Positions 29,840-42,985 of a DNA stretch of 64,000 nucleotides are shown here, one piece after another. The stretch covers positions 186,001 through 250,000 of IMG/VR virus record IMGVR_UViG_3300032236_001850, one strand, 5' to 3'. Position 1 is the stretch's first letter. Each line of letters opens with the position of its first letter. The notes below the pieces were generated by a model. It made no database searches, was not told where the DNA came from, and worked only from the letters and a program-made list of their open reading frames with translations. The translations under genes and the position numbers were made by a program.

Positions 29840-29845
29840 CAACAT

Positions 29846-29919: not shown

Positions 29920-29930
29920 CAAATTAAAAA

Positions 29931-30003: not shown

Positions 30004-30181
30004 CAAACAAAATAGCTATGTACACAAAAAAAGTTAAAGTTGTTATTTACTTCGATACAACATATGAAAGAGCAGAGTATATCTATGTTGACGAAGGAAC
30101 TTCCAAGGAAGATATAACTAAAATGATAAATGAAAAATTCGAGGATTGGTTCTGTTGGGATTCCTTTCCTGGATTATAAAA

Positions 30182-30253
30182 GGGTGGATAGCTCAGCGGT
30201 AGAGCAGCGCACTGTTAATGCGCTGGTCGTGGGTTCGAATCCCACTCTGCCCT
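30182..30253 (+). tRNA. tRNA with GTT (Asn) anticodon and U73
   Basis: Cloverleaf; loop CTGTTAA. Confidence 0.88.
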
Positions 30254-30256
30254 CTA

Positions 30257-30340
30257 GGGTGCCTGGTCAAGCCTCTTACTTCATTGTAACGTAACCAGTG
30301 GGTATAGAGCTAACACGTAATAGTTAGCTCGACGCTACCC
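30257..30340 (+). ncRNA. unidentified structured RNA
   Basis: GGGTG/TACCC closing stem, CTGGT/ACCAG, GAGCTAAC/GTTAGCTC. Confidence 0.45.
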
Positions 30341-30360
30341 AAAAATTTAAAATTATATTG

Positions 30361-31062
30361 ATGGAGGAATCAATTTGCGAAAAATGTTTAAAAGAGCATA
30401 ACGGTAAATATGGAAGCGGAAGATTCTGCTCTTCCTCGTGTTCCAGATCTTTTTCTAGCGTGAAAAATAGGAATGAAACAAACAGAAAAATATCAGAAAA
30501 ACTTAAAATCAATGGTAATGGGGGTATGGTTACGATTGATTGTATATACTGTAACAAAAAATTTACCACCAGAAGACGAGGAAACAGGAATCAAAGATAT
30601 TGCTCAAATTCGTGTTCATCCAGAGATATTTCGGATCTGTCCAGATTGAAAATTTCTGAAAAAATGAAAGTAATAAATAAAGGTGAAAAAAATCCAATGT
30701 TTGGAATATCACCAAAAAATACAAGTAGTGTACAAGCTATCTCTGATAAACACAACGGAGATCCTATATTTAATGTAAGATCCACATATGAAAGAGAATA
30801 TGTGAGATTGCTTAATGATAAAGATTCCGTTCTGTATTTCGTGTATGAGCCAAAAAAATATAGATGTGAATATGAGTTGGAAGGGGTTAGAAGAACCTAT
30901 CAACCTGATTTTTATGTTAAGGAGATTGATATTGAATATGTAACTGAGGTAAAAGCATTATGGCAATTAGAAACAAACGAAACATTAGCAAAGAAGGATG
31001 GATTCATTAGAAAATTCACAATACCATATAAAATATGGACAAAAGAAAACAAGCGGAAGTAG
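30361..31062 (+). CDS. free-standing PD-(D/E)XK (TnsA-like) endonuclease
   Basis: HNG.YGSGRFCS..C, NUMOD3-like GEKNPMFG, YQPDF...EVK. Confidence 0.8.
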   Translation: MEESICEKCLKEHNGKYGSGRFCSSSCSRSFSSVKNRNETNRKISEKLKINGNGGMVTIDCIYCNKKFTTRRRGNRNQRYCSNSCSSRDISDLSRLKISEKMKVINKGEKNPMFGISPKNTSSVQAISDKHNGDPIFNVRSTYEREYVRLLNDKDSVLYFVYEPKKYRCEYELEGVRRTYQPDFYVKEIDIEYVTEVKALWQLETNETLAKKDGFIRKFTIPYKIWTKENKRK

Positions 31063-31125
31063 CTCAATTGGTAGAGCTCCTGCCTTCCAAGCAGGGGGTT
31101 GCCGGATCGTACCCGGTCTTCCGCT
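31053..31125 (+). tRNA. tRNA-Gly(TCC)
   Basis: Cloverleaf; T loop ATCGTAC; overlaps the endonuclease stop codon. Confidence 0.9.
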
Positions 31126-31139
31126 CAAAAATTAAACAG

Positions 31140-31427
31140 ATGTCTAAAGTAGTAAACGTCAAGACCGACCAATATGATGTTTATATAGGAAGACCATCAA
31201 AATGGGGTAATCCATATTCACATAAGGAAGGCACATTAGCAGAGTTTAAAGTTGCTTCGAGAAAAGAAGCAATTGATAAGTATGAGGAATATCTTCTTCA
31301 GAACAACGAGCTAATGGATTCGCTACACGAGATTAAAGGAAAAACTCTAGGATGTTGGTGTAAACCAAAAAGATGTCACGGAGAAATATTAGTAAAATAT
31401 GCTAATAAAGGAAACAAGTTATTTTAA
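31140..31427 (+). CDS. DUF4326 family protein
   Basis: YIGRPSKWGNPY, GKTLGCWCKP..CHG. Confidence 0.88.
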   Translation: MSKVVNVKTDQYDVYIGRPSKWGNPYSHKEGTLAEFKVASRKEAIDKYEEYLLQNNELMDSLHEIKGKTLGCWCKPKRCHGEILVKYANKGNKLF

Positions 31428-31494
31428 AAATATAATAGAACAAATGAAAGCAATCACAGACAGCTCGTAGACCATAATTGTTAGATAAGCAATT

Positions 31495-31728
31495 ATGACT
31501 CAGAAATTGAGAATTTGGAGAGTAGTTCCTACCAGTAAGACTGGTGTTCAGGCTCCCACTTTTTTCGTAGAGACTACGGAAGAAGGACGCGAGAAGGCAG
31601 AGCAATCTGCAACTAAACAAGCAAGACAAAGATCTGGCTTGGGTTCATTTGAAAACTGGAACTTTAACATCACTAAGATGGAAGTTAGAGTTGATAGATT
31701 TGGCAGATACGTCAAACATCACCAGTAA
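31495..31728 (+). CDS. hypothetical protein
   Basis: ORF inside tRNA array. Confidence 0.7.
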   Translation: MTQKLRIWRVVPTSKTGVQAPTFFVETTEEGREKAEQSATKQARQRSGLGSFENWNFNITKMEVRVDRFGRYVKHHQ

Positions 31729-31770
31729 CAGTGATTGTTTTCATAGGTTCAATTTAAAAACCTATGAATT

Positions 31771-31844
31771 GGCGGGGTAGCTCAGATGGTAGTAGCGTTG
31801 GAGTCATAACCCAAAGGTCAGCGGTTCGATCCCGCTCCCCGCTA
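31771..31844 (+). tRNA. tRNA-Met(CAT)
   Basis: Cloverleaf; loop GTCATAA. Confidence 0.88.
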
Positions 31845-31852
31845 CAAAATTT

Positions 31853-31925
31853 GGGGCTGTAGCTCAACTGGCTGAGCGCCTCCCTTGCACGGAGGAGGAT
31901 GTGGGTTCGAATCCCATCAGCTCCA
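31853..31925 (+). tRNA. tRNA-Ala(TGC)
   Basis: Cloverleaf; G3:U70. Confidence 0.95.
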
Positions 31926-31988
31926 CAAAATATTTTTAATAATGAAAAAGAAATTCGACATGTATTAGGTAAAATAACCTAATACAAC

Positions 31989-32219
31989 ATGAAAACAAAA
32001 AAGAGATGGTCTTGGACCGAAGCACAAAGAAGACGCCACACAAAAGGCAGATATCATTATTGGAATAACGTTCCTGCTGACTTCGTTAGACAATTTAACA
32101 AAGCAAACAGAACAAAAGAAAAAGTATCAATGCATGAATTCATCAGAGGTGGAGATCTAGATTTCATAGATTTCACACCAAAGTATTCTAAGAGATGCGC
32201 AGGGTGGATTTATTTTTAA
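31989..32219 (+). CDS. basic hypothetical protein
   Basis: ORF inside tRNA array. Confidence 0.65.
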   Translation: MKTKKRWSWTEAQRRRHTKGRYHYWNNVPADFVRQFNKANRTKEKVSMHEFIRGGDLDFIDFTPKYSKRCAGWIYF

Positions 32220-32229
32220 AATAAGAAAG

Positions 32230-32799
32230 ATGGCAAGAAAAAAAGAAGAAACAGGTTTAAAATTTTATGAGATATCACAAAACAATAGTGGAGGTTCGTT
32301 TATAACGAATGACAAACTATGTCACAGATTATTCATAGAAGCAAACAGCTCAAGCGAAGCAGATTCTATCGCTGAAGATCTTGGATGTTATTGGAACGGT
32401 GTTGATGAAGATATGGACTGTCCGTGTTGCGGAGATCGTTGGTACGGTTCACATTCTGTTGATATAACTTCTATGACAAAAGAAAAAGACAGCAGATATC
32501 CGGTTGAAAGATGGGTTAATGCAAAAGGTCTTAGTGCTGAAGATGAATTGAAAGTATTGCTTGAGCGATATTCAGGAATGGAATGGATTGAAGCTCCATC
32601 GATAAATGAAAAATACGGATCTCGAATAATTGAGGGATCTATTAAACTTAATAGCATAGAAGATTATGTACAGGTAGTTGCTGATCAGTATGGTTGGACC
32701 TATCCGGATGCTAGAATATTCTACTATGACGGAAGGGTAAAAGAGATATTCTCGTCCAATGTGGAAGCACCCAAGAAAAAGAAAAATAAAATAGTCTGA
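32230..32799 (+). CDS. conserved phage protein
   Basis: QNNSGG and DCPCCGDRW. Confidence 0.75.
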   Translation: MARKKEETGLKFYEISQNNSGGSFITNDKLCHRLFIEANSSSEADSIAEDLGCYWNGVDEDMDCPCCGDRWYGSHSVDITSMTKEKDSRYPVERWVNAKGLSAEDELKVLLERYSGMEWIEAPSINEKYGSRIIEGSIKLNSIEDYVQVVADQYGWTYPDARIFYYDGRVKEIFSSNVEAPKKKKNKIV

Positions 32800-32816
32800 T
32801 AGAGATATCAGCAACT

Positions 32817-32891
32817 GGTTCATTAACTCAGTTGGTTCAGAGTGCAACTCCTACAAAGTTGAAGTCATAGGTTCGAATCCTATATGAACTA
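32817..32891 (+). tRNA. tRNA-Val(TAC)
   Basis: Cloverleaf; loop CCTACAA (C33). Confidence 0.85.
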
Positions 32892-32942
32892 CAAGCACAC
32901 AGAAAAGAGAAGGTTCGAAGATATATAGAATAAAAATTAAAA

Positions 32943-33623
32943 ATGTATATTTGCGAAAAATGTAATTCCAATCACAATGGCGAATATGGCTCGGGAAGAT
33001 TTTGTTCACCGAAGTGCAGCAGATCATATAGCACATCATTAAATAGAATATCAATTAATGAAAAAATAGGCAAAGCTATAAAAGGGTCGGGTAATCCACC
33101 ATCCATAAAAAATTGCATATATTGTGGAAATGAATTCATAGCTTCGTGGAAAAGAAAAGATCAAAAAAGCTGTTCAATGTCTTGTTCTATGAAATCCAAT
33201 TGGGAGAATCCTGAATATAAAAAAAATATTACGGAAAAAAATAAAGCAAGATGCATTGATATAAACGAGAGGAACCGGATGAGGGATATTGGTAGAAAGG
33301 GGGGATTTGGGAAAAAAGGTACAACAGAGGGTGGTACCAGATATGATTCAAATCTAGAAAAAATTTGTTTTGAATATCTTGAATCAAAAAATATCAAATT
33401 CGAAGCTCATAAAAATATACCTAATTCATCTAAGATTAGCGATGTATATTTAATAGACCAGAATATCTGGATCGAATTGGATGGAATAAACAGAGAAAAA
33501 AGAAAAGACTGGCTAGGAAAGGATTACGAATACTGGTTAGAAAAAATAATCATATACAAAAGAGAATCCTTAGATATGCGAATAGCATACAATTTGGGTG
33601 ATTTAATTAGGATAATAGAATGA
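32943..33623 (+). CDS. free-standing PD-(D/E)XK endonuclease
   Basis: N-terminus paralogous to 30361; S.LE, SD.Y, WIELDG. Confidence 0.8.
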   Translation: MYICEKCNSNHNGEYGSGRFCSPKCSRSYSTSLNRISINEKIGKAIKGSGNPPSIKNCIYCGNEFIASWKRKDQKSCSMSCSMKSNWENPEYKKNITEKNKARCIDINERNRMRDIGRKGGFGKKGTTEGGTRYDSNLEKICFEYLESKNIKFEAHKNIPNSSKISDVYLIDQNIWIELDGINREKRKDWLGKDYEYWLEKIIIYKRESLDMRIAYNLGDLIRIIE

Positions 33624-33815
33624 GATCCAATTAGTTCGAAAGAGCAAAAAAGGAGGAATAAGATGAACAGACGAAAGTCATCACCAAAGGGTAGAAAATA
33701 GATGTTATTCTGAGTATGGAGCGACGGCTCTAGGAAGGTTCGATTCCTTCACATCACATTTCAAGAGTATGGATAAATGGTGTTAGTAGCGGTCTAAAGT
33801 CTGAATTGGATCTCA
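33621..33815 (+). ncRNA. unidentified ~195-nt structured RNA with T-arm-like hairpin
   Basis: 12-bp closing stem TGAGATCCAATT/AATTGGATCTCA; GAAA tetraloops; GAAGG-TTCGATT-CCTTC. Confidence 0.6.
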
Positions 33816-33905
33816 ATAGGAAATGAAGCTCACAAAGCCCCTCATTTGTAGATCAATTTCGAGCATTTTTGAGCTTAAAGTTGGGTCCACTGTGAGCTTC
33901 AAATT

Positions 33906-33995
33906 GATCGGGTAATATAATGGCAGTATAGGTCGGGGGTCTTACGTGAGTAAGTGGCCTCTGGTCGTGCACAGGTTCGACTCCTGTTCTGATCA
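33906..33995 (+). ncRNA. tRNA-like RNA with extended, GNRA-capped anticodon arm
   Basis: Acceptor, D and T arms present; anticodon loop replaced by TTAC-GTGA-GTAA. Confidence 0.7.
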
Positions 33996-34016
33996 CTAAT
34001 TTTTAAACATTTCGAA

Positions 34017-34406
34017 ATGGACAAGGAAAGATTGGAATCATTAGCTAATAGATTATTGGAGATTCCTGCAAAGGTTGTAGAAGCGCAGTTGGAGTTATTG
34101 ACATTAACTGAAACTTCACAATCCCAATCAGAGAGGATCACTCAGATTGAATCTGTAATTAAAACAGAAATAAGTGCTGCTGTTGACGGAGCTGGTAAAA
34201 AAGCTTATAGCAACGCAGAAGCAAGAGATGCTGCTTTTATTGAAAAGACTACAGATAATTACGAATTATCCGTTGCTAAAACAGATCTTGCTAAAACACA
34301 AAGATCTGTACAGGAGAAAAGAATCAAAATAGAAGCTCTCGGAAACGAACAAAGAAATATAAGAGCAGTTCTTTATTTCATAGGAGGCGGAGAAGGAGCA
34401 ATCTAA
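34017..34406 (+). CDS. coiled-coil hypothetical protein
   Basis: Heptad pattern; YSNAEARDA. Confidence 0.75.
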   Translation: MDKERLESLANRLLEIPAKVVEAQLELLTLTETSQSQSERITQIESVIKTEISAAVDGAGKKAYSNAEARDAAFIEKTTDNYELSVAKTDLAKTQRSVQEKRIKIEALGNEQRNIRAVLYFIGGGEGAI

Positions 34407-34469
34407 GAATTTGTCACCAAGGGTCGGCCCATTGGGGGTGATTAAGAAATACCCATAAACCCCGGCCAC

Positions 34470-34538
34470 GGGATAAAAGCACAAGCGGATGTGCAATCGC
34501 TAAACAGCGAGAGGCAGGGTTCGAGTCCCAATATTCCA
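34470..34538 (+). pseudogene. tRNA-like RNA with collapsed anticodon loop
   Basis: D arm GCAC/GTGC; TCGCT-AAAC-AGCGA; T loop TTCGAGT. Confidence 0.55.
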
Positions 34539-34553
34539 CTAAAAATTGAAAAC

Positions 34554-35027
34554 ATGACACTAAAGGATAAAATCAATGCTGATTATATTACAGCATTCAA
34601 GGCAAAAGACACTGTAGCAAAAAGTGCATTAAGTGGTTTAAAGTCAAAAATTCTAGAAGCTGAGAAATCTGGACCTGCTGGTACAGAGCTTAGTGATGCA
34701 GATGTTTTAAAGATTGTCATAAGCACAATTAAACAAAGAAAACAATCGGTTGAGGAATTTACAAAGGCAGGTAGAATGGATCTTGTTGAACAGGAAACAT
34801 TAGAGCTAGCACCAATTGAAGCTTATCTTCCTAAACAAATGGACGATTCTGAAATCACTTCAGCAGTGAAGGAACTTATAGCTGAGTTTGATGGAGCAAA
34901 CCTTAATATACAAGCTCTTACAGGTAAAGTTATTGGTGCTTTCAATAAAAAGTTTCCAGGTATGGCAAGTCCAGTTAAAGTGAAAGAAATTATTACAGAA
35001 AATATTGTTGAAAAAATTATAAATTAA
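34554..35027 (+). CDS. yqeY: GatB/YqeY domain protein
   Basis: LKDKI..D...A.KAKD, IKQRK.S.E.F.KAGR.DL...E..E...IE.YLPKQM. Confidence 0.9.
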   Translation: MTLKDKINADYITAFKAKDTVAKSALSGLKSKILEAEKSGPAGTELSDADVLKIVISTIKQRKQSVEEFTKAGRMDLVEQETLELAPIEAYLPKQMDDSEITSAVKELIAEFDGANLNIQALTGKVIGAFNKKFPGMASPVKVKEIITENIVEKIIN

Positions 35028-35086
35028 TTTTTTTATTCCGAAAGGATGCCATATATTTGCATCATAATAATTAAACACATTTAAAA

Positions 35087-35260
35087 ATGGCAACAACCCA
35101 AAGAAGATCTAGACAAGCAAGAGCATTGTCTATGTTGGAGGCACAATTGAAAAGCGGTGTTAAAACCGAAAAAGGTACAAGAGATACCAAAATTGCATTA
35201 ACAGACTCTGACGTCAAGAGATTGAATAAAGAGATCGCTATATTGCAATCTAGGTTATAA
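35087..35260 (+). CDS. small basic protein (not in ORF track)
   Basis: 57-aa ORF directly after a TATATTTG promoter. Confidence 0.65.
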   Translation: MATTQRRSRQARALSMLEAQLKSGVKTEKGTRDTKIALTDSDVKRLNKEIAILQSRL

Positions 35261-35264
35261 TAAG

Positions 35265-35431
35265 TTAATTCTCTGTGTGTCCGTAGAGGCGAATTTCCAA
35301 AGTGTAACCTAATACGTGAGAAAGGAAGGCGGTATCTAAGTGCTGATTAGCTGCAACTGAGTCTATAGGGCGATTCAGCGAAAGGGGAAACACATTTATT
35401 GCTACTTGTAGATGGAGGCACGGAGAATTAA
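35265..35431 (+). ncRNA. unidentified ~165-nt structured RNA
   Basis: Closing stem TTAATTCTCTGTGT/GCACGGAGAATTAA with G-U pairs; internal CTGAGTC/GATTCAG. Confidence 0.6.
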
Positions 35432-35435
35432 ATAA

Positions 35436-35509
35436 GGTCCCGTAGTTCAGCGGAAGAATTCCAGAATACGGATCTGGAGACGGGGGTTCGAATCCCTCCG
35501 GGATCTCCA
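35436..35509 (+). tRNA. tRNA-Arg(ACG)
   Basis: Cloverleaf; encoded CCA. Confidence 0.9.
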
Positions 35510-35516
35510 AAAAATA

Positions 35517-35590
35517 CGGTAGGTAGCTCAGTTGGTTAGAGCGTCTCGCTGATACCGAGAAGGCCGGAGGTTCAAGTCCTCCTCTACCGA
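35517..35590 (+). tRNA. tRNA-Ile(GAT)
   Basis: Cloverleaf; loop CTGATAC. Confidence 0.92.
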
Positions 35591-35594
35591 CAAA

Positions 35595-35759
35595 AACGTT
35601 CTTAGAAATATTGGTTAGTGGTAAATTGAAAGGTTACTTCGTTTTTTAGCCCAGTTGGTAGGGCGTAAATTTTTGGTATTTAAGGTCGTGGGTTCAACTC
35701 CCACAAAAACTATTAGCTCCCTTTCTAAATATTCCCTTCCCAATATCTCTAAGCACGTT
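35595..35759 (+). ncRNA. Y-RNA-like unit 1 (colinear tRNA module, TTG loop)
   Basis: AGTGGT..GTTACTTCG..ATTCCCT scaffold enclosing D, anticodon and T arms; near TROVE gene. Confidence 0.75.
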
Positions 35760-35849
35760 AAATTTTAAAAAAATATTGATTTTTTTATGAAACAAAGAGG
35801 ATTTCCTCACATATAAAGATCACAAAACGTTCATTGAAAAGATAATTTA

Positions 35850-35984
35850 TTGTAAGTGGTAACGGAATATGAGTTACTTCGTTTTTTAGCTCATTTGGTA
35901 GAGCAAGAGTCTCTTAAACTTTAGGTAGCTGGTTCAACTCCGGCAAAAACATCCATTGAAACTCACCCGGACATTCCCTTACAA
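35850..35984 (+). ncRNA. Y-RNA-like unit 2 (colinear tRNA module, CTT loop)
   Basis: Same scaffold; TTGTAAG/CTTACAA terminal stem. Confidence 0.8.
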
Positions 35985-35990
35985 AACATA

Positions 35991-36149
35991 TTATAAGTGG
36001 TCAGTAAAATAGTTACTTCGCATGCATTGAAAGCACGGTGTCGGTGGTTCGAATCCATCTTCCCCCACTAAACAAATTAAAAATTTGGGGGAATAGCTCA
36101 GTTGGTAGAGCACGTTAGAAAAAACGCTATTTACATCATTCCCTTATAA
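35991..36149 (+). ncRNA. Y-RNA-like unit 3 (circularly permuted, YrlA-like)
   Basis: T arm, then loop-closed acceptor TTCCCCC/GGGGGAA, then D arm. Confidence 0.8.
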
Positions 36150-36156
36150 AGCATAC

Positions 36157-36300
36157 GACAGTAGTAAGTATAGAAGTTACATCGCACATCGGTTCGACTC
36201 CGATAGTTTCCGCCAAAACTGGAAATTTAGACAAGTGGTTAAGTCATCTGACAGTAAATCAGACATTAAATTGTTCACACTTCTTACATCATTCTCTGTT
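36157..36300 (+). ncRNA. Y-RNA-like unit 4 (permuted, retains anticodon arm with GTA)
   Basis: T arm, AGTTTCC-GCCA/GGAAATT, D arm, TCTGA-CAGTAAA-TCAGA. Confidence 0.75.
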
Positions 36301-36308
36301 AGTTTTAT

Positions 36309-36346
36309 AAAGGGATTAGGACGCCAAGCGACTTAATCCCTTTTTT
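36309..36346 (+). terminator. intrinsic terminator after the Y-RNA array
   Basis: GGGATTAGG/CTTAATCCC plus T run. Confidence 0.75.
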
Positions 36347-36393
36347 ATTAGAGTAAATTTAAAAGTAAAATATAAAAACAAAAATTAGAAATT

Positions 36394-37317
36394 ATGAAAA
36401 GAAATTCATTAGCATCAAAAGGATTATCAATGTCTCAAGCTCAATCTGTATCAAATCTTTGCAACCAAAGATCTAAAGATATTACTGCAGCTTTAGCAGA
36501 CATCAACAACGCATCAAAAACGATAAGAATCTCCAAGGAGGATCATCAGTTAACTGCTGCAAAACCTTTGCCTGAGAATGTTGTTGAACTTCTTAAGAAT
36601 AAGGCAAGGTTGCATGCAACACAGGCTTTCCTAATGGAGAACATAAAAGCCAAGGACGAATTAATAAACTCGATCAAAAGAGAATATTTTGATTACGAGG
36701 ATCAAAATCCAGCTCCCACAAGAGAGCCTAATGTTCAACCTGAAGTTCTTGTTCAAGTTGGTGAGGATTGGGGTTGGGAACAACTCTCAATGGACGAGTA
36801 TAATGAATTCATTGAGGCTGAGGCTTATGCTTCACACATAGGTCAATTTATTCATAAAGGTGGAACATTAGATCGTCTGAGAGCTGAGCTACCAAAAATC
36901 CAGCTTCTTGAGTTCATGGAGGTTGAGATTGGAAAGAAAACTCCCGTTAAAGTCAACGTGCACCACAAGTCTGAGGAGCTGTTAAAAACTCATGAGGAGT
37001 TGGCAGCTCTTCATAGAGGTTACGAACAAAGAGTTAACTACTTCAAATCTAAGGTTAAGAATGCTGTAACCAAGGAGAACGCAAGGATTTCTAAAATTAA
37101 TGCTGACGCACAGGCAGAAGCTAACGAAAAGAATGCTCTTGTGATGAACGAGTATTCAAAAAAGAAAGAAACCTGGTTAGCAGATTACAAGAAAGCAAGT
37201 CTTGATTTTGAGACTGAGCGTCAAAATAGAATCAGCGAAGCTGTAAATCTTAAGATCCAGGTGGATGCTAGATTCCAACCAGTTGTTGATGAATTTTTGA
37301 AACAACTAGAAAAATAA
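36394..37317 (+). CDS. coiled-coil protein of unknown function
   Basis: 307 aa, helical; lies between the Y-like RNAs and the large ncRNA. Confidence 0.85.
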   Translation: MKRNSLASKGLSMSQAQSVSNLCNQRSKDITAALADINNASKTIRISKEDHQLTAAKPLPENVVELLKNKARLHATQAFLMENIKAKDELINSIKREYFDYEDQNPAPTREPNVQPEVLVQVGEDWGWEQLSMDEYNEFIEAEAYASHIGQFIHKGGTLDRLRAELPKIQLLEFMEVEIGKKTPVKVNVHHKSEELLKTHEELAALHRGYEQRVNYFKSKVKNAVTKENARISKINADAQAEANEKNALVMNEYSKKKETWLADYKKASLDFETERQNRISEAVNLKIQVDARFQPVVDEFLKQLEK

Positions 37318-37321
37318 AAAT

Positions 37322-37701
37322 AAATTGAGGTGCTGAAGGGGTAAGCACAAGCCGATTCCCCCGATGCTTTGATTCGGAGAGATAAGGTCCTTTAATTAAT
37401 GGCGTCAAGCCATTATCTTATAAGATAAATGACTATTAATCATATACAGCAATCAGAGGTTCCTTCGGGAGCCTCTATAACTCCGCTTCTTCTATAAAAT
37501 TAAACAAAACTGAGATAGAACTCAATTGTTAGACAAGTTACTGAAAGCCATAGAGAAAGAGAAATCTTTACCACTAGGCAGATAATTGGCTAACTACAGA
37601 GACTTAGTTTTTGTCCTTGCCTTTGCGATAGAGGAAGGTCTTTGACATTGATCTTGCATTTGACGTGGTCTATATGCTTTATCTTTCCGATAACTCAATT
37701 T
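37322..37701 (+). ncRNA. ~380-nt multi-branched structured RNA
   Basis: Nested long-range helices with G-U pairs; cUUCGg hairpin; no ORF of 60 aa or more. Confidence 0.7.
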
Positions 37702-37731
37702 TAAAATATTAACGAATAAACAATTATAATC

Positions 37732-39312
37732 ATGTCACGTTACAACCAAAAAGTAAAAAGAACTGTAGAGACAGTTACAAACCACCAAGGTGGTACAGGT
37801 GTGAAGTATGATCCAAAATTGGAATTAATTGCGATTCTTACTACTGGATTAGACAATTCATACTATGAAAAATTATCGGATAGAGAGAACAGATTTGTTC
37901 AACTTATTGACGAATTATCTAAGAAAGATATCGAATTCGTCGCGAAAGCGCTCGTATACGCGAGAACTGTTGTTGGTCAAAGATCAGTAACACACTTCGG
38001 TTCGGTGTCATTAGTTAAGCATTTATCAGGTTCTGCTATAGGTAGAAGATTCTTCTCTAAAAGAGATAAGAATGCTAAAACCGGAGGTATTGTATACCGT
38101 TTAGATGACGTATTAGAGATCATCGCAGCTTACCAACACTTCAATCCAGGTAAACCATTACCTAACTCGATGAAGAAAGGTTTCAAAGCAGCTTTGGAAT
38201 CAGCTGATGCGTACGAATTAGCTAAATATCAAGGTAAAGGTAAAGCAGTTTCGCTTGTAGATGTTGTTAACTTGGTTCGTCCAAAACCAACAACACCACA
38301 AATGGAAGGTGTTTTCAAAGATCTTATGACTGGTAAATTAAAACAGTTCAACACGGTTGAGGATAAAAACTCAAAAGCTGGACAAGATGTTGCTGCAAAA
38401 GTTAAATCTGGAGAAATCACTAAAGCACAAGCTGAGATTGAATTGACACAGTCTAAAGAAAGCAACTATGCTGAATTGATTAAAACAAGAAAAATTGGTT
38501 ACTTGGCATTGCTTCGTAACTTAAGAAACATCATCAACACGAGTTCAAACTCTGAATTGGTTAGCGGTGCATGTGAACTTTTAATCGATGAAAAATTGAT
38601 CAGAAAATCTTTGGTTTTCCCTCACCAAATCGATATTGCTTTGGAGATTCTTTTACAAGAAACTAGTGCTTCTGCATCCAGACCATTCGTTACAGCTTTA
38701 AATAAAGCCTACGAATTAGCAATACCAAACTTGGTTGAATTGTTCTCACACGGTAGAACAGCGGTTGTTATAGATACATCTGGATCTATGCACGGAATGG
38801 GTCACGGTGTTAAAATGAATGGTAAAGCTATCAATAAACACTGTATCGATAAGGCTGCTCTTATTGGAGCAACTTTAGCAAAAGGTATTGGTGCTGATTT
38901 ATATCAATTTGCAACAACAACTGAGAGTATTAGATACAACCCAGGTGATAGTATAAACACTATCAAAAACACATGTTTAAGCTTACAAGGTAGAGTTGGA
39001 CACGGTACGGACTTCGGTTCAATCTTCTCAACTTTACAGTCAAGTGGTAAATATGATCGTATCTTTATCATATCGGATTTACAAGGAGGTGATAGAATCG
39101 TTACAAACAGTTCTTTCCAATCCTATAAATCTAAGCATGGTGAACCGTTCATCTACACGGTAGATATTCAAGGATATGGTACAACCATGTTCAAACCAGG
39201 TAACAAATTAGTTCAACTTTTTGGTTACTCTGCTGATATCTACGAGATGATCAAAAAAGCTGAGATTGATCCAAAAGCAATTTTGAGAGAAATTGAAGCT
39301 ATCGTGATCTAA
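37732..39312 (+). CDS. Ro60/TROVE domain RNA-binding protein with vWA domain
   Basis: LAKYQG....VSL.DV..LV.PKP, ALLRNLRNI, DTSGSM MIDAS, GTD, IISD.Q. Confidence 0.93.
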   Translation: MSRYNQKVKRTVETVTNHQGGTGVKYDPKLELIAILTTGLDNSYYEKLSDRENRFVQLIDELSKKDIEFVAKALVYARTVVGQRSVTHFGSVSLVKHLSGSAIGRRFFSKRDKNAKTGGIVYRLDDVLEIIAAYQHFNPGKPLPNSMKKGFKAALESADAYELAKYQGKGKAVSLVDVVNLVRPKPTTPQMEGVFKDLMTGKLKQFNTVEDKNSKAGQDVAAKVKSGEITKAQAEIELTQSKESNYAELIKTRKIGYLALLRNLRNIINTSSNSELVSGACELLIDEKLIRKSLVFPHQIDIALEILLQETSASASRPFVTALNKAYELAIPNLVELFSHGRTAVVIDTSGSMHGMGHGVKMNGKAINKHCIDKAALIGATLAKGIGADLYQFATTTESIRYNPGDSINTIKNTCLSLQGRVGHGTDFGSIFSTLQSSGKYDRIFIISDLQGGDRIVTNSSFQSYKSKHGEPFIYTVDIQGYGTTMFKPGNKLVQLFGYSADIYEMIKKAEIDPKAILREIEAIVI

Positions 39313-39405
39313 TAAATCACCGTAAACAAAAAAGCCATTCGAAAGAATGGCTTTTTTTATTGTTATGGGAAATGATATATACAATAAAAAAATCAAATCA
39401 GTAAT

Positions 39406-39759
39406 ATGATACATCTATATGAATTCGAAAAATTCAATGAAAGTTTAAACATTGAAAATTACTGTCAAACATATCTTAAAGATTCGGGGTTTGATCATAG
39501 AATACTAAATAAAAATATTTTCATAACTCGTGGGGAAGGTAAACCTAAATTTACTTACGATGAAATTAAAAAACATCTTAGACCACTAGTTACATTTTTG
39601 GATAGAGATATGGGTGTAAAGGAAATAATTCTTAAGGAGAGTCCATCCAATAGAACCAGCAGAACAACAAGACACAGATGCACGGTTAAGGAATTCATGG
39701 GTGATACTAACACTGCAGCGAAATGCGAGCATTTAAGAGAAGTTGAAATAATTTTGTAA
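39406..39759 (+). CDS. putative virion protein
   Basis: MIHLYEFEKFNES; GATATATA upstream. Confidence 0.7.
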   Translation: MIHLYEFEKFNESLNIENYCQTYLKDSGFDHRILNKNIFITRGEGKPKFTYDEIKKHLRPLVTFLDRDMGVKEIILKESPSNRTSRTTRHRCTVKEFMGDTNTAAKCEHLREVEIIL

Positions 39760-39855
39760 TTTTTTCAAAAATATTTTTTTTATTCGAAACATTTCCTTAA
39801 ATTTGCATAAAATATTAAAATCAATTAGATATATAAATCTATAAAAATAAAAATC

Positions 39856-39948
39856 ATGTCACAAATACAGTACATATTAGATACATTACATTTAGATCAC
39901 ACAAGTTCAACTTGTGAATCGTCTATTGTGATGAGGAGAGAGTATTGA
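39856..39948 (+). CDS. leader peptide 2 (30 aa; not in ORF track)
   Basis: MSQIQYILDTLHLDHTSSTCESSIVMRREY between promoter and terminator. Confidence 0.75.
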   Translation: MSQIQYILDTLHLDHTSSTCESSIVMRREY

Positions 39949-40004
39949 TATTAAGTAACGTAATAAATATCAAAAAGGTCTCCTCGAAAAAGGAGGCCTT
40001 TTTT
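39933..40004 (+). terminator. attenuator 2: terminator 39972-40004 with antiterminator strand 39933-39939
   Basis: AGGTCTCCT/AGGAGGCCT plus T run; GAGGAGA is complementary to TCTCCTC. Confidence 0.78.
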
Positions 40005-40035
40005 ATTGTTCATTGAAATATTGTAAAAGTAAATT

Positions 40036-40123
40036 GGAGAGGTGCGCAAGTGGTCAAAAGCGCCTAGACTTGAAATCTAGTGTGAGCTAATTACTCCCGT
40101 GGGTTCGAATCCCACTCTCTCCG
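40036..40123 (+). tRNA. tRNA-Ser(TGA)
   Basis: Cloverleaf with long variable arm. Confidence 0.93.
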
Positions 40124-40237
40124 CTTAGGTTACCCTTCTTGTTCCGTATGGGGTTATAAAGACGAATCAGTCAACGGAGCCCATGATGGTACCTATACCG
40201 AAGAAAATAGGAAAGATTCTATATGTCAGCCCTCAAT

Positions 40238-40323
40238 GGAGAGGAATCCTAAACGGTGATAGGTCATGCCTGGAAAGCATCGGGTGCGGGCAACTGCATG
40301 GAGTTCGATCCTCCTTCTCTCCT
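40238..40323 (+). tRNA. tRNA-Ser(GGA)
   Basis: Cloverleaf with long variable arm. Confidence 0.82.
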
Positions 40324-40331
40324 CAAAAAAT

Positions 40332-40404
40332 GCCTAAGTAGCTCAGTTGGTAGAGCAGCTGATTTGTAATCAGCAGGTCGCAGGTTCGACCCCTGTCTTA
40401 GGCT
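40332..40404 (+). tRNA. tRNA-Thr(TGT)
   Basis: Cloverleaf. Confidence 0.95.
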
Positions 40405-40412
40405 CTAATTCC

Positions 40413-40495
40413 GGTGCCTTGCCTGAGTGGCTGAAAGGGGCGGTCTGCAAAACCGCTAGAGAAATCTCACGTCAGTTCGAATCTGACAGGCACCT
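40413..40495 (+). tRNA. tRNA-Cys(GCA) with long variable arm
   Basis: Loop CTGCAAA; U73; GAGA-AA-TCTC extra arm. Confidence 0.88.
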
Positions 40496-40514
40496 CTAAT
40501 AAAAATTAGTAATC

Positions 40515-40961
40515 ATGGAACAAGACAAAAAACAGAAAATCGAACAGATCAGAAAGTTCCTTGAGGAAAAAAGGGAAATTGATCGAAGAAATTTTGAGGA
40601 ACTTAGAAGAAAAAGATGGGACAATCTTAAACCCTTCAAAACACCTCAAGATGTACCGGAAATACCAAGAGTCGGAGAAAAGGAATATAAAGAATATTAT
40701 ATACCAAGACTCATCGAAGCTGGAGCAATTCCAAAAACAGAACTTGAAGATGGAGCATTCTATCTTGGAGATCACAGAAGAGCAAAAATTGGTAAATGGA
40801 ACGACGCTATGAATGTCTTCGAGTATTGGAGATTTAAAATGGGAAATTATTTCATGGATAAATGCAATCACTTCGAAGACGATGATGGATTCGCTTTATT
40901 TACACCAATTAAAAAAGTAACAGAAGAAGAATTTAATAAGACAGGAAAAAATGAAAATTAA
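40515..40961 (+). CDS. hypothetical phage protein
   Basis: L.DG..Y.G..RRA....W, H.EDDDG..LF.P. Confidence 0.75.
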   Translation: MEQDKKQKIEQIRKFLEEKREIDRRNFEELRRKRWDNLKPFKTPQDVPEIPRVGEKEYKEYYIPRLIEAGAIPKTELEDGAFYLGDHRRAKIGKWNDAMNVFEYWRFKMGNYFMDKCNHFEDDDGFALFTPIKKVTEEEFNKTGKNEN

Positions 40962-41229
40962 ATTAAGAAATGTGATGCTTGGTCTAAAGGATCAACTTCC
41001 ATTAAAAAGAGCATTTCGAAATTTTTTCATAACAGGTAACGCTTTAGGTTTATTCGATAAAAGAAGCCATTATAGAATGGACGGCAAGGAGAAACAAGGA
41101 TTTCCAACAAAGGAATCGGGTAGAAAAGCAGCAGACGCAATGCAAAGAAAACATGGTAAATATTTTAGTGTTTATAAATGCATCTTCTGTGATGGTTATC
41201 ATCTAGGAAAAAATAGAGACAATAAATAG
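40951..41229 (+). CDS. hypothetical protein with CxxC..H motif
   Basis: YKCIFCDGYHLG. Confidence 0.75.
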   Translation: MKIKLRNVMLGLKDQLPLKRAFRNFFITGNALGLFDKRSHYRMDGKEKQGFPTKESGRKAADAMQRKHGKYFSVYKCIFCDGYHLGKNRDNK

Positions 41230-41284
41230 CATCTCCCTAGGGAGAAGGCACTGGCTGACGATCTGGCCTTATAGATCGTAACAT

Positions 41285-41358
41285 GGTGGACGTAGCTCAA
41301 TCGGTAGAGCGCTGGTTTGTGGTACCAGAGGTAGCGGGATCGTAACCCGTCGTTCACC
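41285..41358 (+). tRNA. tRNA-His(GTG)
   Basis: Cloverleaf; G-1:C73. Confidence 0.92.
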
Positions 41359-41370
41359 CAATTTATAAAT

Positions 41371-41688
41371 ATGAGAAAATTATTGATTGCACTATTTCTA
41401 TTTACGTCAATCTCATATGCACAGATGACAACATCAAGCATATCAGGCAGCATAGAAATAGACGGAGTTCCAGCTGGAAAGGTAAAGCTTATAATAAAGC
41501 ATCTACCTACAAATTACGCAACGGAAGCAGAAACAAATAACAGAGGTGACTTCAGTATAGAGGATCTCGACGTTGGTGGTCCTTACGGATTAACAATAAC
41601 AATAAACGGAATCATATATTATAGAAAATATGAATATCTAAATCTTGGCGAAAATGATGTTAAGAAAATAGAGATATTCACAAAATAA
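41371..41688 (+). CDS. exported carboxypeptidase-regulatory-like domain protein
   Basis: AQ.TTSSISG, H.PT, TN..G.F....L.VGGPY, as in N-termini of Bacteroidota TonB-dependent receptors. Confidence 0.75.
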   Translation: MRKLLIALFLFTSISYAQMTTSSISGSIEIDGVPAGKVKLIIKHLPTNYATEAETNNRGDFSIEDLDVGGPYGLTITINGIIYYRKYEYLNLGENDVKKIEIFTK

Positions 41689-41691
41689 CAA

Positions 41692-41778
41692 GCCCCGATG
41701 GCGAAACAGGTTAGACGCCCCAGATTTAAACTCTGGTGTTCCGAAAGGAGCGTGCCGGTTCGACTCCGGCTCGGGGTA
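41692..41778 (+). tRNA. tRNA-Leu(TAA)
   Basis: Cloverleaf with long variable arm. Confidence 0.92.
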
Positions 41779-41833
41779 CAACAATTTCCAGAACGCCTCT
41801 GCTCAGCATGCGCAATTTTCTGGGCTTGTATTC

Positions 41834-41919
41834 GGAGATGTAAGCATAGTGGTACTGCAGCGGTTTGCTAAACCGTTCGGCGTTCATTCGCCGCGGAGGT
41901 TCGAATCCTCTCATCTCCG
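41834..41919 (+). tRNA. tRNA-Ser(GCT)
   Basis: Cloverleaf with long variable arm. Confidence 0.9.
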
Positions 41920-41927
41920 CTAATATT

Positions 41928-42001
41928 CGGAGCAAGGTCCACTGGCGAAGGATGCCGCCCTGTCACGGCGTGCGAACCGGGTTCGAATCCCGGTGTTCCG
42001 G
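41928..42001 (+). tRNA. tRNA-Asp(GTC)
   Basis: Cloverleaf. Confidence 0.88.
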
Positions 42002-42133
42002 CAGGGGTGACAAAAAATTATTTTTGAAAATTTTCAAAAAAATATCAAAAATAATTTTTTTATCCCGAAAGAATATCATACTTTTGCAATACAATAATAA
42101 ACAAAGAAACAACGTTCATTAACATAAAGAATT

Positions 42134-42290
42134 AAAAGAAATATTTTTGGAGAAGATCAAGTCTATTGGTTGCCATACCCTGACGCAATAGACCGTTCTA
42201 ATATCAGAAATGAGATTAGACCAGCACAGTCACGCAAGACTGGTAAACCAAAGAGTAAAGGGATGTGAAAGTGGTTTGGATATTTCTTTT
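42134..42290 (+). ncRNA. unidentified multi-hairpin RNA
   Basis: AAAAGAAATATTT/GGATATTTCTTTT closing stem with four internal hairpins. Confidence 0.6.
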
Positions 42291-42298
42291 TTTATAAC

Positions 42299-42373
42299 GG
42301 TCTCTTAGCTCAGTTGGTTAGTAGCACCTGACTCATAATCAGGGGGTCGCTGGTTCGAGCCCAGCAGGGACCA
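42299..42373 (+). tRNA. tRNA-Ile2(CAT), probably lysidine-modified
   Basis: CAT anticodon on an Ile2-like body. Confidence 0.8.
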
Positions 42374-42374
42374 C

Positions 42375-42519
42375 TAGGAAATAATGGTTTCCGCTGAAGA
42401 CAAGGTGTCGACGCCCTCTTCAGCTCTACAGGATTCACACACCCTCTGCCGGTGCACTGTAAAACTATTACTAAGCAGCAAAGATTGGAGCGATATTGGT
42501 ACTCCATCATTATTTCCTA
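42375..42519 (+). ncRNA. unidentified multi-branched RNA
   Basis: TAGGAAATAATGG/TCATTATTTCCTA; GCTGAAGA/TCTTCAGC; TACAG/CTGTA; TGGAG/CTCCA. Confidence 0.6.
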
Positions 42520-42524
42520 AATTT

Positions 42525-42596
42525 GCTCCCATCGTCTATCGGTTAGGACGTCAGGTTTTCATCCTGGAAAGTCGGGTTCGACTCCCGGTGGGAGTA
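42525..42596 (+). tRNA. tRNA-Glu(TTC)
   Basis: Cloverleaf. Confidence 0.93.
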
Positions 42597-42687
42597 CAAA
42601 AAATTGAGAGAGTGGAGAAATCCCTGCAAGTTTCAAATTAGCATGCGATGAAATTAAATTGCAATGAAGCATATCAGTTTTAAAGTA

Positions 42688-42814
42688 TAAATAAGTGGTA
42701 ATTAAGAGAGTTACTTCGTAGATCATTTGGTTAGATCAATTGTTTCACTCACAATGGGTAGCTGGTTCGAGTCCAGTCGGATATTAAATACTTTCTTTAG
42801 TATTCCCTTATTTA
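42688..42814 (+). ncRNA. Y-RNA-like unit 5 (D, anticodon and T arms, no acceptor stem; CAC loop)
   Basis: AAGTGGT..GTTACTTCG..ATTCCCTT scaffold as in units 1-4. Confidence 0.75.
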
Positions 42815-42817
42815 AAC

Positions 42818-42891
42818 GGTATCGCAGCATATTGGTGTATGGCGCCACCCTGTCACGGTGGAGATTGCGGGTTCGAGCCCCGTCGATACCG
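42818..42891 (+). tRNA. tRNA-Asp(GTC)
   Basis: Cloverleaf. Confidence 0.9.
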
Positions 42892-42906
42892 CTAAAAAAT
42901 ATAAAT

Positions 42907-42985
42907 CGCGAAATGGTGGAAGATGGCCTATCCCGCCGGGCTCATATCCCGGAGATCCCAAGTTCGAATCTTGGTTTCGCTACCA
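42907..42985 (+). tRNA. initiator tRNA-fMet(CAT)
   Basis: C1:U72 mismatch; three G-C pairs in the anticodon stem; encoded CCA. Confidence 0.88.

What the first reader, a model, noticed from the sequence alone, without database searches (positions are those of the whole stretch)
36394..37701. Large structured ncRNA next to an unknown coiled-coil protein, upstream of Ro60
Seen: the 414-bp gap has nested long-range helices: AAATTGAG/CTCAATTT (37322/37694), TCGGAGAGATAAGG/CTTTATCTTTCCGA (37374/37677, two G-U), CATATA/TATATG, CTTCTTCTAT/ATAGAGGAAG (37486/37628) and ACAAAACTGAG/CTTAGTTTTTGT, plus a cUUCGg hairpin. The 3' part has 6-nt periodic TTG repeats (TTTGTC CTTGCC TTTGCG ... TTTGAC ATTGAT CTTGCA TTTGAC). 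G-U pairs favour a plus-strand RNA. Inference: an uncharacterised protein-RNA pair, with the periodic tract as a multimer binding site or template.
Basis: partly seen in the sequence, partly recalled or inferred. Interest (0 to 1): 0.75.

Follow-up and report, generated by a model that had tools for sequence, protein, structure and literature searches.

The report
New phage RNA with partner protein
The gap holds a real, expressed, roughly 370-base folded RNA of a kind not yet catalogued, which large T4-like phages always encode right behind one unknown 300-residue protein at the end of their tRNA gene clusters; its link to the neighbouring Ro60 gene is a coincidence of this one phage lineage.

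Summary
Window 37327-37696 (+) is a structured RNA. It is conserved downstream of every testable homolog of the 307-aa ORF, in more than 150 viral contigs.

- **Structure:** on 78 non-redundant sequences, 92.9% of cells pair. 45 of 59 pairs show double changes. The covariation score is 0.53, against 0.15 or less in slid controls.
- **Periodic repeats:** the UUG repeats with a 6-nt period (3 + 4 copies) are conserved across the family, while the spacer bases vary.
- **Expression:** four freshwater metatranscriptomes hold 348-383-nt contigs that match just this RNA.
- **Known families:** no Rfam, Pfam, PHROG, PDB or literature match was found for the RNA or the protein.
- **Linkage:** the protein-RNA pair is the only conserved linkage in the neighbourhood. 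It sits at the 3' end of tRNA arrays in T4-like phages of 160-434 kb, and distant versions occur in gut phages.
- **Ro60:** Ro60 is adjacent only in the window's own clade. Five complete carrier genomes lack Ro60 altogether. A separate YrlA-like RNA at 36035-36117 is the likelier Ro60 partner.
- **Function:** unproven. The best guess is a ribonucleoprotein in which the UUG tracts dock an oligomeric protein.

I rate it categorically new and of high interest.

The parts
36394..37317 (+). p307: 307-aa orphan protein gene, the obligate upstream partner of the RNA
   Evidence: ORF. No Pfam, PHROG or NCBIfam match. AF2 mean pLDDT 84: two repeats of helix, beta-hairpin, long helix. No informative fold match. 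The family has 811 clusters at 50% identity, all about 300 aa.
37327..37696 (+). The structured ncRNA, from P0 5' strand to P0 3' strand; 370 nt here, 294-376 nt across the family
   Evidence: nhmmer conservation, covariation, RNA contigs 37334-37688, 37339-37719 and 37354-37689, length range.
37322..37329 (+). P0 5' strand, pairing with 37694-37701
   Evidence: The inner 3 bp, 37327-29 with 37694-96, are 83-100% paired with AU/UA swaps. The outer pairs are weak.
37332..37367 (+). P1 hairpin. Its nearly invariant 15-nt apical region (37342-37356) holds a 2-bp mini-stem with an ANAA loop.
   Evidence: Helices 2-4: 10 of 11 pairs with double changes (the remaining mini-stem pair is invariant). 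Loop conservation.
37372..37387 (+). P2 5' strand, a long-range closing helix that pairs with 37677-37692
   Evidence: Helices 5 and 6: all 14 pairs covary.
37388..37485 (+). Variable domain. It includes a clade-specific hairpin at 37398-37414 and the UUCG hairpin at 37455-37476.
   Evidence: Poorly alignable, but most homologs carry a hairpin before P3.
37486..37495 (+). P3 5' strand, pairing with 37628-37637
   Evidence: Helix 7: 8 of 8 pairs with double changes, 96% paired.
37510..37523 (+). Nearly invariant CUGAG-AUAGAA-CUC element (P4)
   Evidence: Invariant in 68 of 78 sequences. Variants such as L033 and the subgroup with a longer hairpin favour a local hairpin. The long-range pairing to 37602-37608 is also compatible.
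37528..37594 (+). P5 stem (37528-37536 with 37586-37594) with a variable apical insert
   Evidence: Helix 12: 7 of 8 pairs with double changes, 97% paired.
37608..37625 (+). Tract A: three UUG motifs at a 6-nt period
   Evidence: Information-content profile. The third repeat may pair with a conserved CAA after P3 (helix 8).
37628..37637 (+). P3 3' strand, which separates the two tracts
37638..37664 (+). Tract B: GUC followed by four UUG motifs at a 6-nt period
   Evidence: The repeats are also present in distant homologs L221, L224 and L231.
37670..37675 (+). Invariant CUAUAU, unpaired in the consensus structure
37677..37692 (+). P2 3' strand
37694..37701 (+). P0 3' strand

Best explanation
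SHOWN:
- Window 37327-37696 (+) encodes a member of an uncatalogued family of structured RNAs about 300-380 nt long.
- Its architecture is a three-way core (P0, P1, P2) with invariant junction bases, then an inner domain closed by P3. The inner domain holds an invariant 14-nt hairpin element and stem P5. Two single-stranded tracts carry 3 + 4 UUG motifs spaced exactly 6 nt apart.
- The RNA gene always lies just downstream of, and on the same strand as, one orphan gene of about 300 aa (p307).
- The pair usually sits directly after the last tRNA of the tRNA array in T4-like (Gp23-capsid) phages of 160-434 kb. In about 30% of loci an intrinsic terminator follows.
- The RNA accumulates in nature as a discrete species of about 350-385 nt, more abundant than the p307 coding part.

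INFERRED:
- The module is transcribed as the tail of the tRNA operon, and the RNA survives as a stable 3' product.
- The RNA and p307 act together as a ribonucleoprotein.
- The two UUG tracts, held apart by helix P3, serve as a two-part docking platform for an oligomeric protein. That protein is most likely p307 itself, otherwise a host factor. This would resemble the way TRAP or HutP read regularly spaced triplets.
- The constant placement beside tRNA genes suggests the particle acts on tRNA or translation during infection.
- Ro60 is not part of the system.
For: Conservation and linkage:
- The RNA is found downstream of the p307 homolog in about 75 of 80 loci.
- In the reverse test, starting from an RNA-only pattern, 84 of 87 copies have p307 upstream and 3 are at contig edges.
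- Neighbour clustering finds p307 in 75 of 77 loci. The next most common family is in 20.
- Remote p307 homologs (profile E about 1e-30 to 1e-40) and a gut-phage homolog still carry the RNA core or the repeats downstream.

Structure:
- 92.9% paired against 76.8% in shuffles. 45 of 59 pairs show double changes. Covariation is 0.534 against 0.15 or less when slid.
- The strongest covarying column pairs all lie inside the model.
- G-U makes up 8.3% of paired cells and A-C 1.6%.

Repeats and expression:
- Repeat profile.
- Expression: contigs of 357, 368 and 383 nt coincide with the RNA in 3 samples. Depth is 4-28 over the RNA and 0 over 36596-37291.
- Terminators follow the RNA in 23 of 77 loci, against 2 of 77 in the control.

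Context:
- tRNA genes lie nearby in 43 of 60 loci, usually immediately upstream. Where a phage has a single tRNA-Arg, it lies just downstream.
- Phage identity: a Gp23 capsid gene, direct terminal repeats, 100% completeness.
Against: - No binding evidence of any kind exists. Complex prediction returned no fold.
- p307 is mildly acidic (pI 6.0-6.7) and has no recognisable RNA-binding domain or fold relative.
- Small ORFs are sometimes inserted between p307 and the RNA, so strict adjacency is not essential.
- The metatranscriptome data are assembled contigs, not reads. They carry no strand and give only rough depth. p307 mRNA of relatives may partly fall below the identity cut-off.
- The function 'acts on tRNA or translation' rests on gene neighbourhood alone.
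Confidence: 0.5

Rival explanations
1. An RNA-only machine of the GOLLD/ROOL type. The RNA self-assembles into a homo-oligomer and needs no dedicated protein. p307 is merely the last protein gene of the same operon.
For: Same ecological and genomic niche: phage tRNA islands (Kretsch et al. 2025, PMC12286853, read). Related phages carry GOLLD at an equivalent spot beside Ro60. The RNA has many invariant unpaired bases that could make tertiary or quaternary contacts.
Against: GOLLD and ROOL have no obligate protein gene partner. Here the pairing is 100% where testable and survives down to very low protein identity. At about 320 nt the RNA is much smaller than the cage-forming RNAs.
Confidence: 0.15
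2. A sponge or decoy for a host single-strand RNA-binding protein that likes U-rich sites, such as Hfq, a cold-shock-domain protein, S1 or RNase E. Seven UUG sites would titrate it during infection.
For: Seven regularly spaced U-rich sites lie in single-stranded tracts. The nearly invariant GUCUUUG at 37638-37644 equals, from my memory of Morgan et al. 2007, the preferred heptamer of B. subtilis CspB. The RNA is abundant relative to nearby mRNA.
Against: It does not explain the obligate p307 linkage or the elaborate conserved fold. No further UUG arrays exist in the phage genome that would mark competing targets. The host is unknown. The CspB motif is recalled from memory and was not tested.
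Confidence: 0.15
3. A cis-acting 3' UTR element of the p307 mRNA, acting either as an autoregulatory operator bound by p307 or as a stabiliser against 3' exonucleases.
For: It starts about 10 nt after the p307 stop codon, on the same strand, and is often followed by a terminator.
Against: The RNA contigs cover the RNA without the coding region. Other ORFs can lie between the two. About 320 nt with invariant loops is far more than a stabiliser needs.
Confidence: 0.1
4. The Y RNA partner of the downstream Ro60 protein.
For: It is adjacent to Ro60 in the window, and its 5' and 3' ends form a long terminal stem, as in Y RNAs.
Against: There is no Y_RNA or YrlA hit in the gap even at E = 10 and no tRNA-like module. 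Ro60 is adjacent only in near-identical relatives. Five complete carrier genomes lack TROVE. A YrlA-like element with T-arm, acceptor stem and D-arm lies at 36035-36117.
Confidence: 0.02
5. Not an RNA at all, but a conserved DNA element (promoter cluster, origin, packaging site) or a chance fold.
For: The TTG-rich tracts resemble -35 hexamers. A sigma-70-like site was scored at 37297-37326.
Against: Compensatory changes preserve pairing, and the G-U excess is strand-specific. RNA contigs exist. Promoter-like sites are not enriched over shuffles.
Confidence: 0.01

Closest known systems
GOLLD (RF02032) and ROOL (RF03087), large ornate phage RNAs
   Same: Both are large, heavily structured, of unknown function, and encoded by phages next to or after tRNA arrays. 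GOLLD env-38 lies downstream of a tRNA-Met (PMC12286853). Here the module very often follows a tRNA-Met. GOLLD occupies a similar place near Ro60 in related phages.
   Different: There is no sequence or structure match to either model, although the same search finds GOLLD in L086-L088. This RNA is about half the size or less. It is strictly coupled to a protein gene. It has UUG hexamer tracts.
Bacterial and phage Y RNAs (YrlA, RF02553) with Ro60/Rsr
   Same: Both are a protein-RNA gene pair in phages with a terminal stem formed by the two RNA ends. In this window the RNA lies beside Ro60.
   Different: It has no tRNA-like domain and no covariance-model match. The partner protein is p307, not Ro60. 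The window holds a separate YrlA-like element.
TRAP (11 G/UAG triplets) and HutP (3 + 3 UAG triplets) RNA targets; recalled from memory
   Same: Both have regularly spaced triplets with variable spacers in single-stranded RNA. As in the hut leader, the triplets are split into two clusters. That pattern is typical of RNA wrapping a symmetric oligomer.
   Different: The triplet is UUG with a 6-nt period. The tracts sit inside a large folded RNA, not an attenuator leader. p307 has no MtrB or HutP domain. Binding was not tested.
CsrB/RsmZ-type protein-sponge RNAs
   Same: Both carry multiple copies of a short motif on one abundant RNA.
   Different: The motifs here are not GGA in hairpin loops. 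The RNA has a complex covarying fold and a linked protein gene.
T4 stable RNAs C and D (species 1 and 2) in the T4 tRNA cluster; recalled from memory
   Same: Both are stable RNAs of unknown function, co-encoded with the tRNA operon of a T4-type phage.
   Different: The T4 RNAs are about 120-140 nt and tRNA-like at their ends, with no partner ORF. No similarity was tested or seen.

Membership tests
Y RNA / YrlA (RF00019, RF02553) | Match to the family covariance model | tested here: not met
   No hit in 37200-37800 even at E = 10. The same library gives YrlA at 31.9 bits for 36035-36117.
Y RNA / YrlA (RF00019, RF02553) | Genomic and functional coupling to a Ro60/TROVE gene | tested here: not met
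   Ro60 is adjacent only in the window's clade. 0 of 5 complete carrier genomes have TROVE.
Y RNA / YrlA (RF00019, RF02553) | tRNA-like module (T-arm, acceptor stem, D-arm) | tested here: not met
   Neither ARAGORN nor the Rfam tRNA model finds anything in the gap.
Y RNA / YrlA (RF00019, RF02553) | Long stem formed by the 5' and 3' ends | tested here: met
   P0 and P2. This is a generic feature.
GOLLD / ROOL | Match to RF02032 or RF03087 | tested here: not met
   Positive control: GOLLD scores 277-288 bits in L086-L088.
GOLLD / ROOL | Encoded by phages near tRNA islands | tested here: met
   tRNA genes lie within the held flanks of 43 of 60 loci, mostly directly upstream.
GOLLD / ROOL | RNA-only homo-oligomeric cage | not testable with these tools
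   Needs cryo-EM or SEC-MALS.
TRAP / HutP-type triplet-repeat operators | Several identical triplets at regular spacing in single-stranded RNA | tested here: met
   Seven UUG motifs at a 6-nt period in two tracts, conserved in 78 sequences.
TRAP / HutP-type triplet-repeat operators | Cognate ring protein of the MtrB or HutP family | tested here: not met
   No Pfam family for p307 or any of the 29 homologs. No fold match.
TRAP / HutP-type triplet-repeat operators | Protein binds the triplets | not testable with these tools
   Complex prediction returned no fold for protein plus RNA.
tmRNA, RNase P RNA, 6S RNA and other housekeeping RNAs | Match to the Rfam model or to ARAGORN | tested here: not met
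   The GAGGAAGGUC resemblance to RNase P CR-I is a 10-nt coincidence in a different structural context.
Guide-RNA partners of mobile-element nucleases or recombinases (TnpB/IscB omega RNA, IS110/IS1111 bridge RNA) | Protein with a RuvC/HNH or DEDD recombinase domain beside the RNA | tested here: not met
   p307 has no such Pfam domain. It is a helical protein with two beta-hairpins. It is single-copy in the genome.

The most novel reading that the evidence does not exclude
A new class of phage ribonucleoprotein. An oligomer of the orphan protein p307 would wrap the 3 + 4 UUG repeats of its own RNA of about 320 nt. The particle, made from the tail of the tRNA operon, would intervene in tRNA supply or translation. 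It might, for example, capture a host factor or tRNA, or protect phage tRNAs from host anticodon nucleases. This would be the first large ornate phage RNA with an identified protein partner.
Probability: 0.3. Interest if true: 0.9.

Novelty: categorically new. Interest (0 to 1): 0.8.

Why it matters
Large, highly structured bacterial and phage RNAs of unknown function are rare. OLE, GOLLD, ROOL and raiA are the known examples, and each discovery has opened new biology. Most of them lack any clue to a partner.

This family has features that make it unusually tractable:
- It is widespread. There are hundreds of viral contigs from lakes, ponds and wastewater, with distant versions in gut phages. 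The protein family has 811 clusters at 50% identity.
- Its fold is supported by strong covariation.
- It is visibly expressed in nature.
- It comes with a built-in candidate partner, p307, and a built-in candidate binding code, the UUG repeats every 6 nt.

That makes a long-standing question directly testable: what do the big RNAs in phage tRNA islands do? Testing needs only two synthetic genes. The result also corrects an attractive but wrong reading, namely that this RNA is the Y RNA of the phage Ro60.

Tried and rejected
RNA identity:
- Rfam at gathering and at permissive thresholds, on the window and on five diverse homolog loci, gave no match for the RNA.
- The RNase P idea was dropped. 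The GAGGAAGGUC similarity lies in a paired strand of P3, and no covariance-model hit exists.
- A covariance model of the full RNA could not be built, because calibration was forecast to be too long. I used nhmmer profiles and MAFFT alignments instead.
- A scan for covarying column pairs outside the model found no convincing pseudoknot.
- Coding potential of the tracts (Phe-X dipeptide repeats) was rejected. The two tracts are out of phase (19 nt apart), P3 carries indels, and there is no conserved start.

p307 identity:
- Pfam, PHROG and NCBIfam scans gave nothing.
- The PDB sequence profile gave nothing.
- Foldseek against PDB, AFDB and BFVD, VIA-align wide, and both ESM Atlas searches (by shape and by features) gave only generic helical look-alikes or its own family.
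- Complex prediction of p307 with RNA 37484-37676 was accepted and counted but not folded. It is no evidence either way.

Distribution and host:
- Cultured phages (INPHARED) gave no match for the RNA or for p307 with three different queries. A remote homolog (P0261) hit only two gut metagenome phage records.
- Host inference from MAG labels was uninformative, as the bins look misassigned.

Genome and literature:
- A search for other UUG hexamer arrays in the genome, as possible competing targets, found only the antisense strand of a Thr-rich coding repeat.
- Three literature searches found no description of this RNA or protein.
Full report
**What is there.** The window is part of a complete 434,509-bp virus record with direct terminal repeats and a T4-type Gp23 capsid gene. 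It has no rRNA. The finding lies inside a 31-gene tRNA island. The order on the + strand is:
- tRNA-Lys (35880-35955)
- a YrlA-like element (about 36010-36175)
- tRNA remnants, then a terminator (36310-36346)
- the 307-aa ORF, here called p307 (36394-37317)
- the 414-bp gap
- a TROVE/Ro60 gene (37732-39312; Pfam TROVE 2e-10, phrog_850 2.5e-32)
- a terminator (39328-39357)

**Checking the observation.**
- The + strand of the gap folds to -102 kcal/mol (z = -3.3, 0 of 100 shuffles as good). The - strand gives z = -1.4.
- A single-sequence fold is weak evidence, so I collected relatives. The search for related loci with p307 returned 80 IMG/VR loci at 47-91% protein identity.
- nhmmer with the gap sequence found homologous DNA directly downstream of the protein gene, always on the same strand, in about 75 of them.
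- The Ro60 query returned 20 loci. Only those nearly identical to the window also contain the RNA. Even L001, whose p307 is 84% identical, has the RNA followed by a terminator and no Ro60.

**Is the linkage real?** I ran the reverse test with an RNA-only 15-nt pattern. It gave 120 loci.
- 87 of them have full RNA homology.
- 84 of those 87 have a p307 homolog (43-89% identity) immediately upstream on the same strand.
- The remaining three have the RNA within 230 nt of a contig end.
- The 33 chance matches have neither feature.

I then clustered all ORFs in 77 non-redundant loci. p307 is present in 75, while the next most common neighbour family is in only 20. The pair is therefore the only conserved linkage, not a by-product of general synteny.

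A profile search of 1.84 billion representatives found 811 clusters with E below 1e-3. All are about 300 aa with no added domains. Remote members still carry the RNA downstream:
- P0261 is followed by a gene-free stretch of 325-419 nt with a CUGAG-ACAGAA-CUC hairpin (the family's hairpin with one loop base changed), P5 and the UUUG repeats (nhmmer 4e-20).
- P0234 is followed by a 520-nt gene-free stretch (nhmmer 2e-6). In that locus the RNA runs straight into a tRNA-Arg gene.
- A still more distant homolog lies in a 98.6-kb phage from rodent faeces. It sits 31 nt after a tRNA and is followed by about 290 nt with UUG repeats at a 6-nt period and a terminator.

Both genes are single-copy in the window's genome.

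**Structure.** On 78 sequences less than 93% identical (alignment A5), a 59-pair consensus is 92.9% paired, against 76.8% after shuffling. 45 pairs show changes on both sides. The covariation score is 0.534, against 0.09-0.15 when the 3' partners are slid by 1-3 columns. An earlier 38-sequence alignment gave 30 of 43 pairs with compensatory changes. The strongest covarying column pairs in an all-against-all scan all lie inside the model. G-U pairs (8.3% of cells) far exceed A-C (1.6%), which fixes the + strand.

In window coordinates the supported helices are:
- P0: 37327-29 with 37694-96.
- P1: hairpin 37332-37367, with a nearly invariant 15-nt apical region that contains a covarying 2-bp mini-stem.
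- P2: 37372-87 with 37677-92.
- P3: 37486-95 with 37628-37.
- P5: 37528-36 with 37586-94.

- The junction bases GGU, UUU and AAC around P0, P1 and P2 are invariant.
- The 14-nt element at 37510-37523 is identical in 68 of 78 sequences. However, variants such as L033 (UAGG/CCUA) and a subgroup that replaces the element with a longer hairpin favour a local hairpin.

**The repeats.** The information-content profile shows sharp UUG peaks every six nucleotides. There are three in tract A (G at 37613, 37619, 37625) and four in tract B (G at 37644, 37650, 37656, 37662). The bases between them vary freely. The tracts are separated by the 3' strand of P3 and are 19 nt out of phase. Given that offset and the indels in P3, a coding or templating reading is unlikely. 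Four consecutive repeats occur nowhere else in the 434-kb genome. The only other TTG-rich cluster is the antisense strand of a Thr-rich coding repeat.

**Expression.** A search of public runs with p307 plus the gap (1338 nt, of which 69% is coding) found six freshwater metatranscriptomes. Each holds only 13-20% of the sampled words. I laid four of them.
- Assembled RNA contigs of 383, 368 and 357 nt coincide with 37339-37719, 37354-37689 and 37334-37688. They are 97-98% identical to the window.
- Depth is 4-28 over the RNA, zero over 36596-37291, and 0-4 over the first 200 nt of p307 and over Ro60.

Caveats apply. These are contigs without strand, depth is approximate, and DNA carry-over cannot be formally excluded. 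Even so, uniform DNA would not give RNA-sized contigs at the same place in three samples.

A + strand intrinsic terminator follows the RNA within about 25 nt in 23 of 77 loci, against 2 of 77 control windows. In some loci one or two small ORFs lie between p307 and the RNA, in the same orientation.

**Context.** tRNA genes lie in the held flanks of 43 of 60 loci examined.
- Typically the whole array is upstream on the same strand, and its last tRNA (often Met) ends 30-100 nt before the p307 start.
- Phages with a single tRNA (Arg-UCU) have it 1-2 kb downstream.
- The five complete carrier genomes checked (162-365 kb) all have Gp23, and none has a TROVE gene.

The module is therefore the tail of the tRNA operon of T4-like phages, and Ro60 is dispensable.

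The likely Ro60 partner in the window is a different RNA. Rfam YrlA scores 31.9 bits (E = 3e-5, below the gathering score) at 36035-36117. There a T-arm, a closed acceptor stem and a D-arm sit on a long stem. In other Ro60 phages a truncated tRNA-like hit lies about 270 nt upstream of Ro60, and a bona fide GOLLD RNA lies about 1 kb upstream.

**What p307 is.** It remains unknown.
- There is no Pfam, PHROG or NCBIfam family and no PDB sequence relative.
- The AF2 model is confident (pLDDT 84). It shows two repeats of helix, beta-hairpin, long helix, followed by C-terminal helices.
- Foldseek, VIA-align and Atlas searches return only its own family or generic helical proteins.
- Conserved polar and histidine-rich helix faces exist, and the pI is 6.0-6.7.
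- The protein-RNA complex prediction was not executed by the tool.

**Interpretation.**
- Shown: a new, widespread, expressed, structured RNA family that is obligately paired with an orphan protein gene at the end of phage tRNA operons.
- Inferred, at about one chance in three: the two act as an RNP, and the 3 + 4 UUG tracts dock an oligomeric protein in the manner of the TRAP or HutP triplet operators. Those two systems are recalled from memory.
- Rivals: an RNA-only assembly like GOLLD or ROOL; a sponge for a host U-rich-binding protein; a cis-acting 3' UTR element.
- Effectively excluded: the Y-RNA reading and a non-RNA reading.

**Novelty.** No Rfam 15 family matches, although the same searches detect tRNA, YrlA and GOLLD nearby. 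No protein family, solved structure, cultured phage or paper matches either. GOLLD and ROOL are the closest by niche (PMC12286853), but they share neither sequence, structure nor the protein coupling.

Noticed in passing
window 36010-36175 (core hit 36035-36117, +): A YrlA-like (RF02553) element scoring 31.9 bits, E = 3e-5, below the gathering score. It has a permuted tRNA-like module (T-arm, closed acceptor stem, D-arm) on top of a long stem. It is the probable Y RNA of the phage Ro60, yet it is separated from the Ro60 gene by the p307-RNA module.
   Followed up: partly
window 36185-36277 and 36310-36346: tRNA remnants: a T-arm plus a CCA-like end at 36185-36215, and a weak tRNA hit of 21.7 bits at 36221-36277. 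A strong terminator hairpin follows. A 162-nt metatranscriptome contig matches 36097-36251 exactly.
   Followed up: no
L086 2720-3134, L087 2489-2905, L088 1913-2328: Bona fide GOLLD RNAs (277-288 bits) lie inside tRNA arrays, roughly 0.9-1.7 kb upstream of Ro60 genes of related phages. A truncated tRNA-like hit lies about 270 nt before Ro60 in L086 and L088; L087 has a full-length tRNA hit at the same distance. A GOLLD-Ro60 neighbourhood may deserve its own look.
   Followed up: no
L059 3849-3926; L112 1745-1822: A suppressor tRNA (anticodon UUA, reading UAA) lies directly upstream of the p307 homolog. This hints at stop-codon recoding in some carrier phages.
   Followed up: no
L231 (PQ006092.1, a 98.6-kb phage from rodent faeces) 2691-4177: Two tRNAs are followed by a very distant p307 homolog. 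Then comes about 290 nt annotated as a 58-aa hypothetical CDS, which instead carries UUG repeats at a 6-nt period and a terminator. The module seems to exist in gut phages, and that small CDS is probably spurious.
   Followed up: partly
window 24278-42985: A 31-gene tRNA island in a 434.5-kb T4-like jumbo phage. It is interspersed with a YqeY-like protein (34491-35027), an HNH-endonuclease-like ORF (32943-33623) and Ro60.
   Followed up: partly
genome C1:332183-332318 (outside the window): A dense TTG/GTT repeat on the - strand. It is the antisense strand of a Thr-rich coding repeat and is unrelated to the RNA's hexamer tracts.
   Followed up: yes
L225-L229 (genome contigs): Contigs that carry p307 are filed in GenBank MAGs labelled Omnitrophota, Paceibacterota (a 363-kb scaffold) and Gammaproteobacteria. 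These are probably jumbo-phage contigs binned as bacteria.
   Followed up: no
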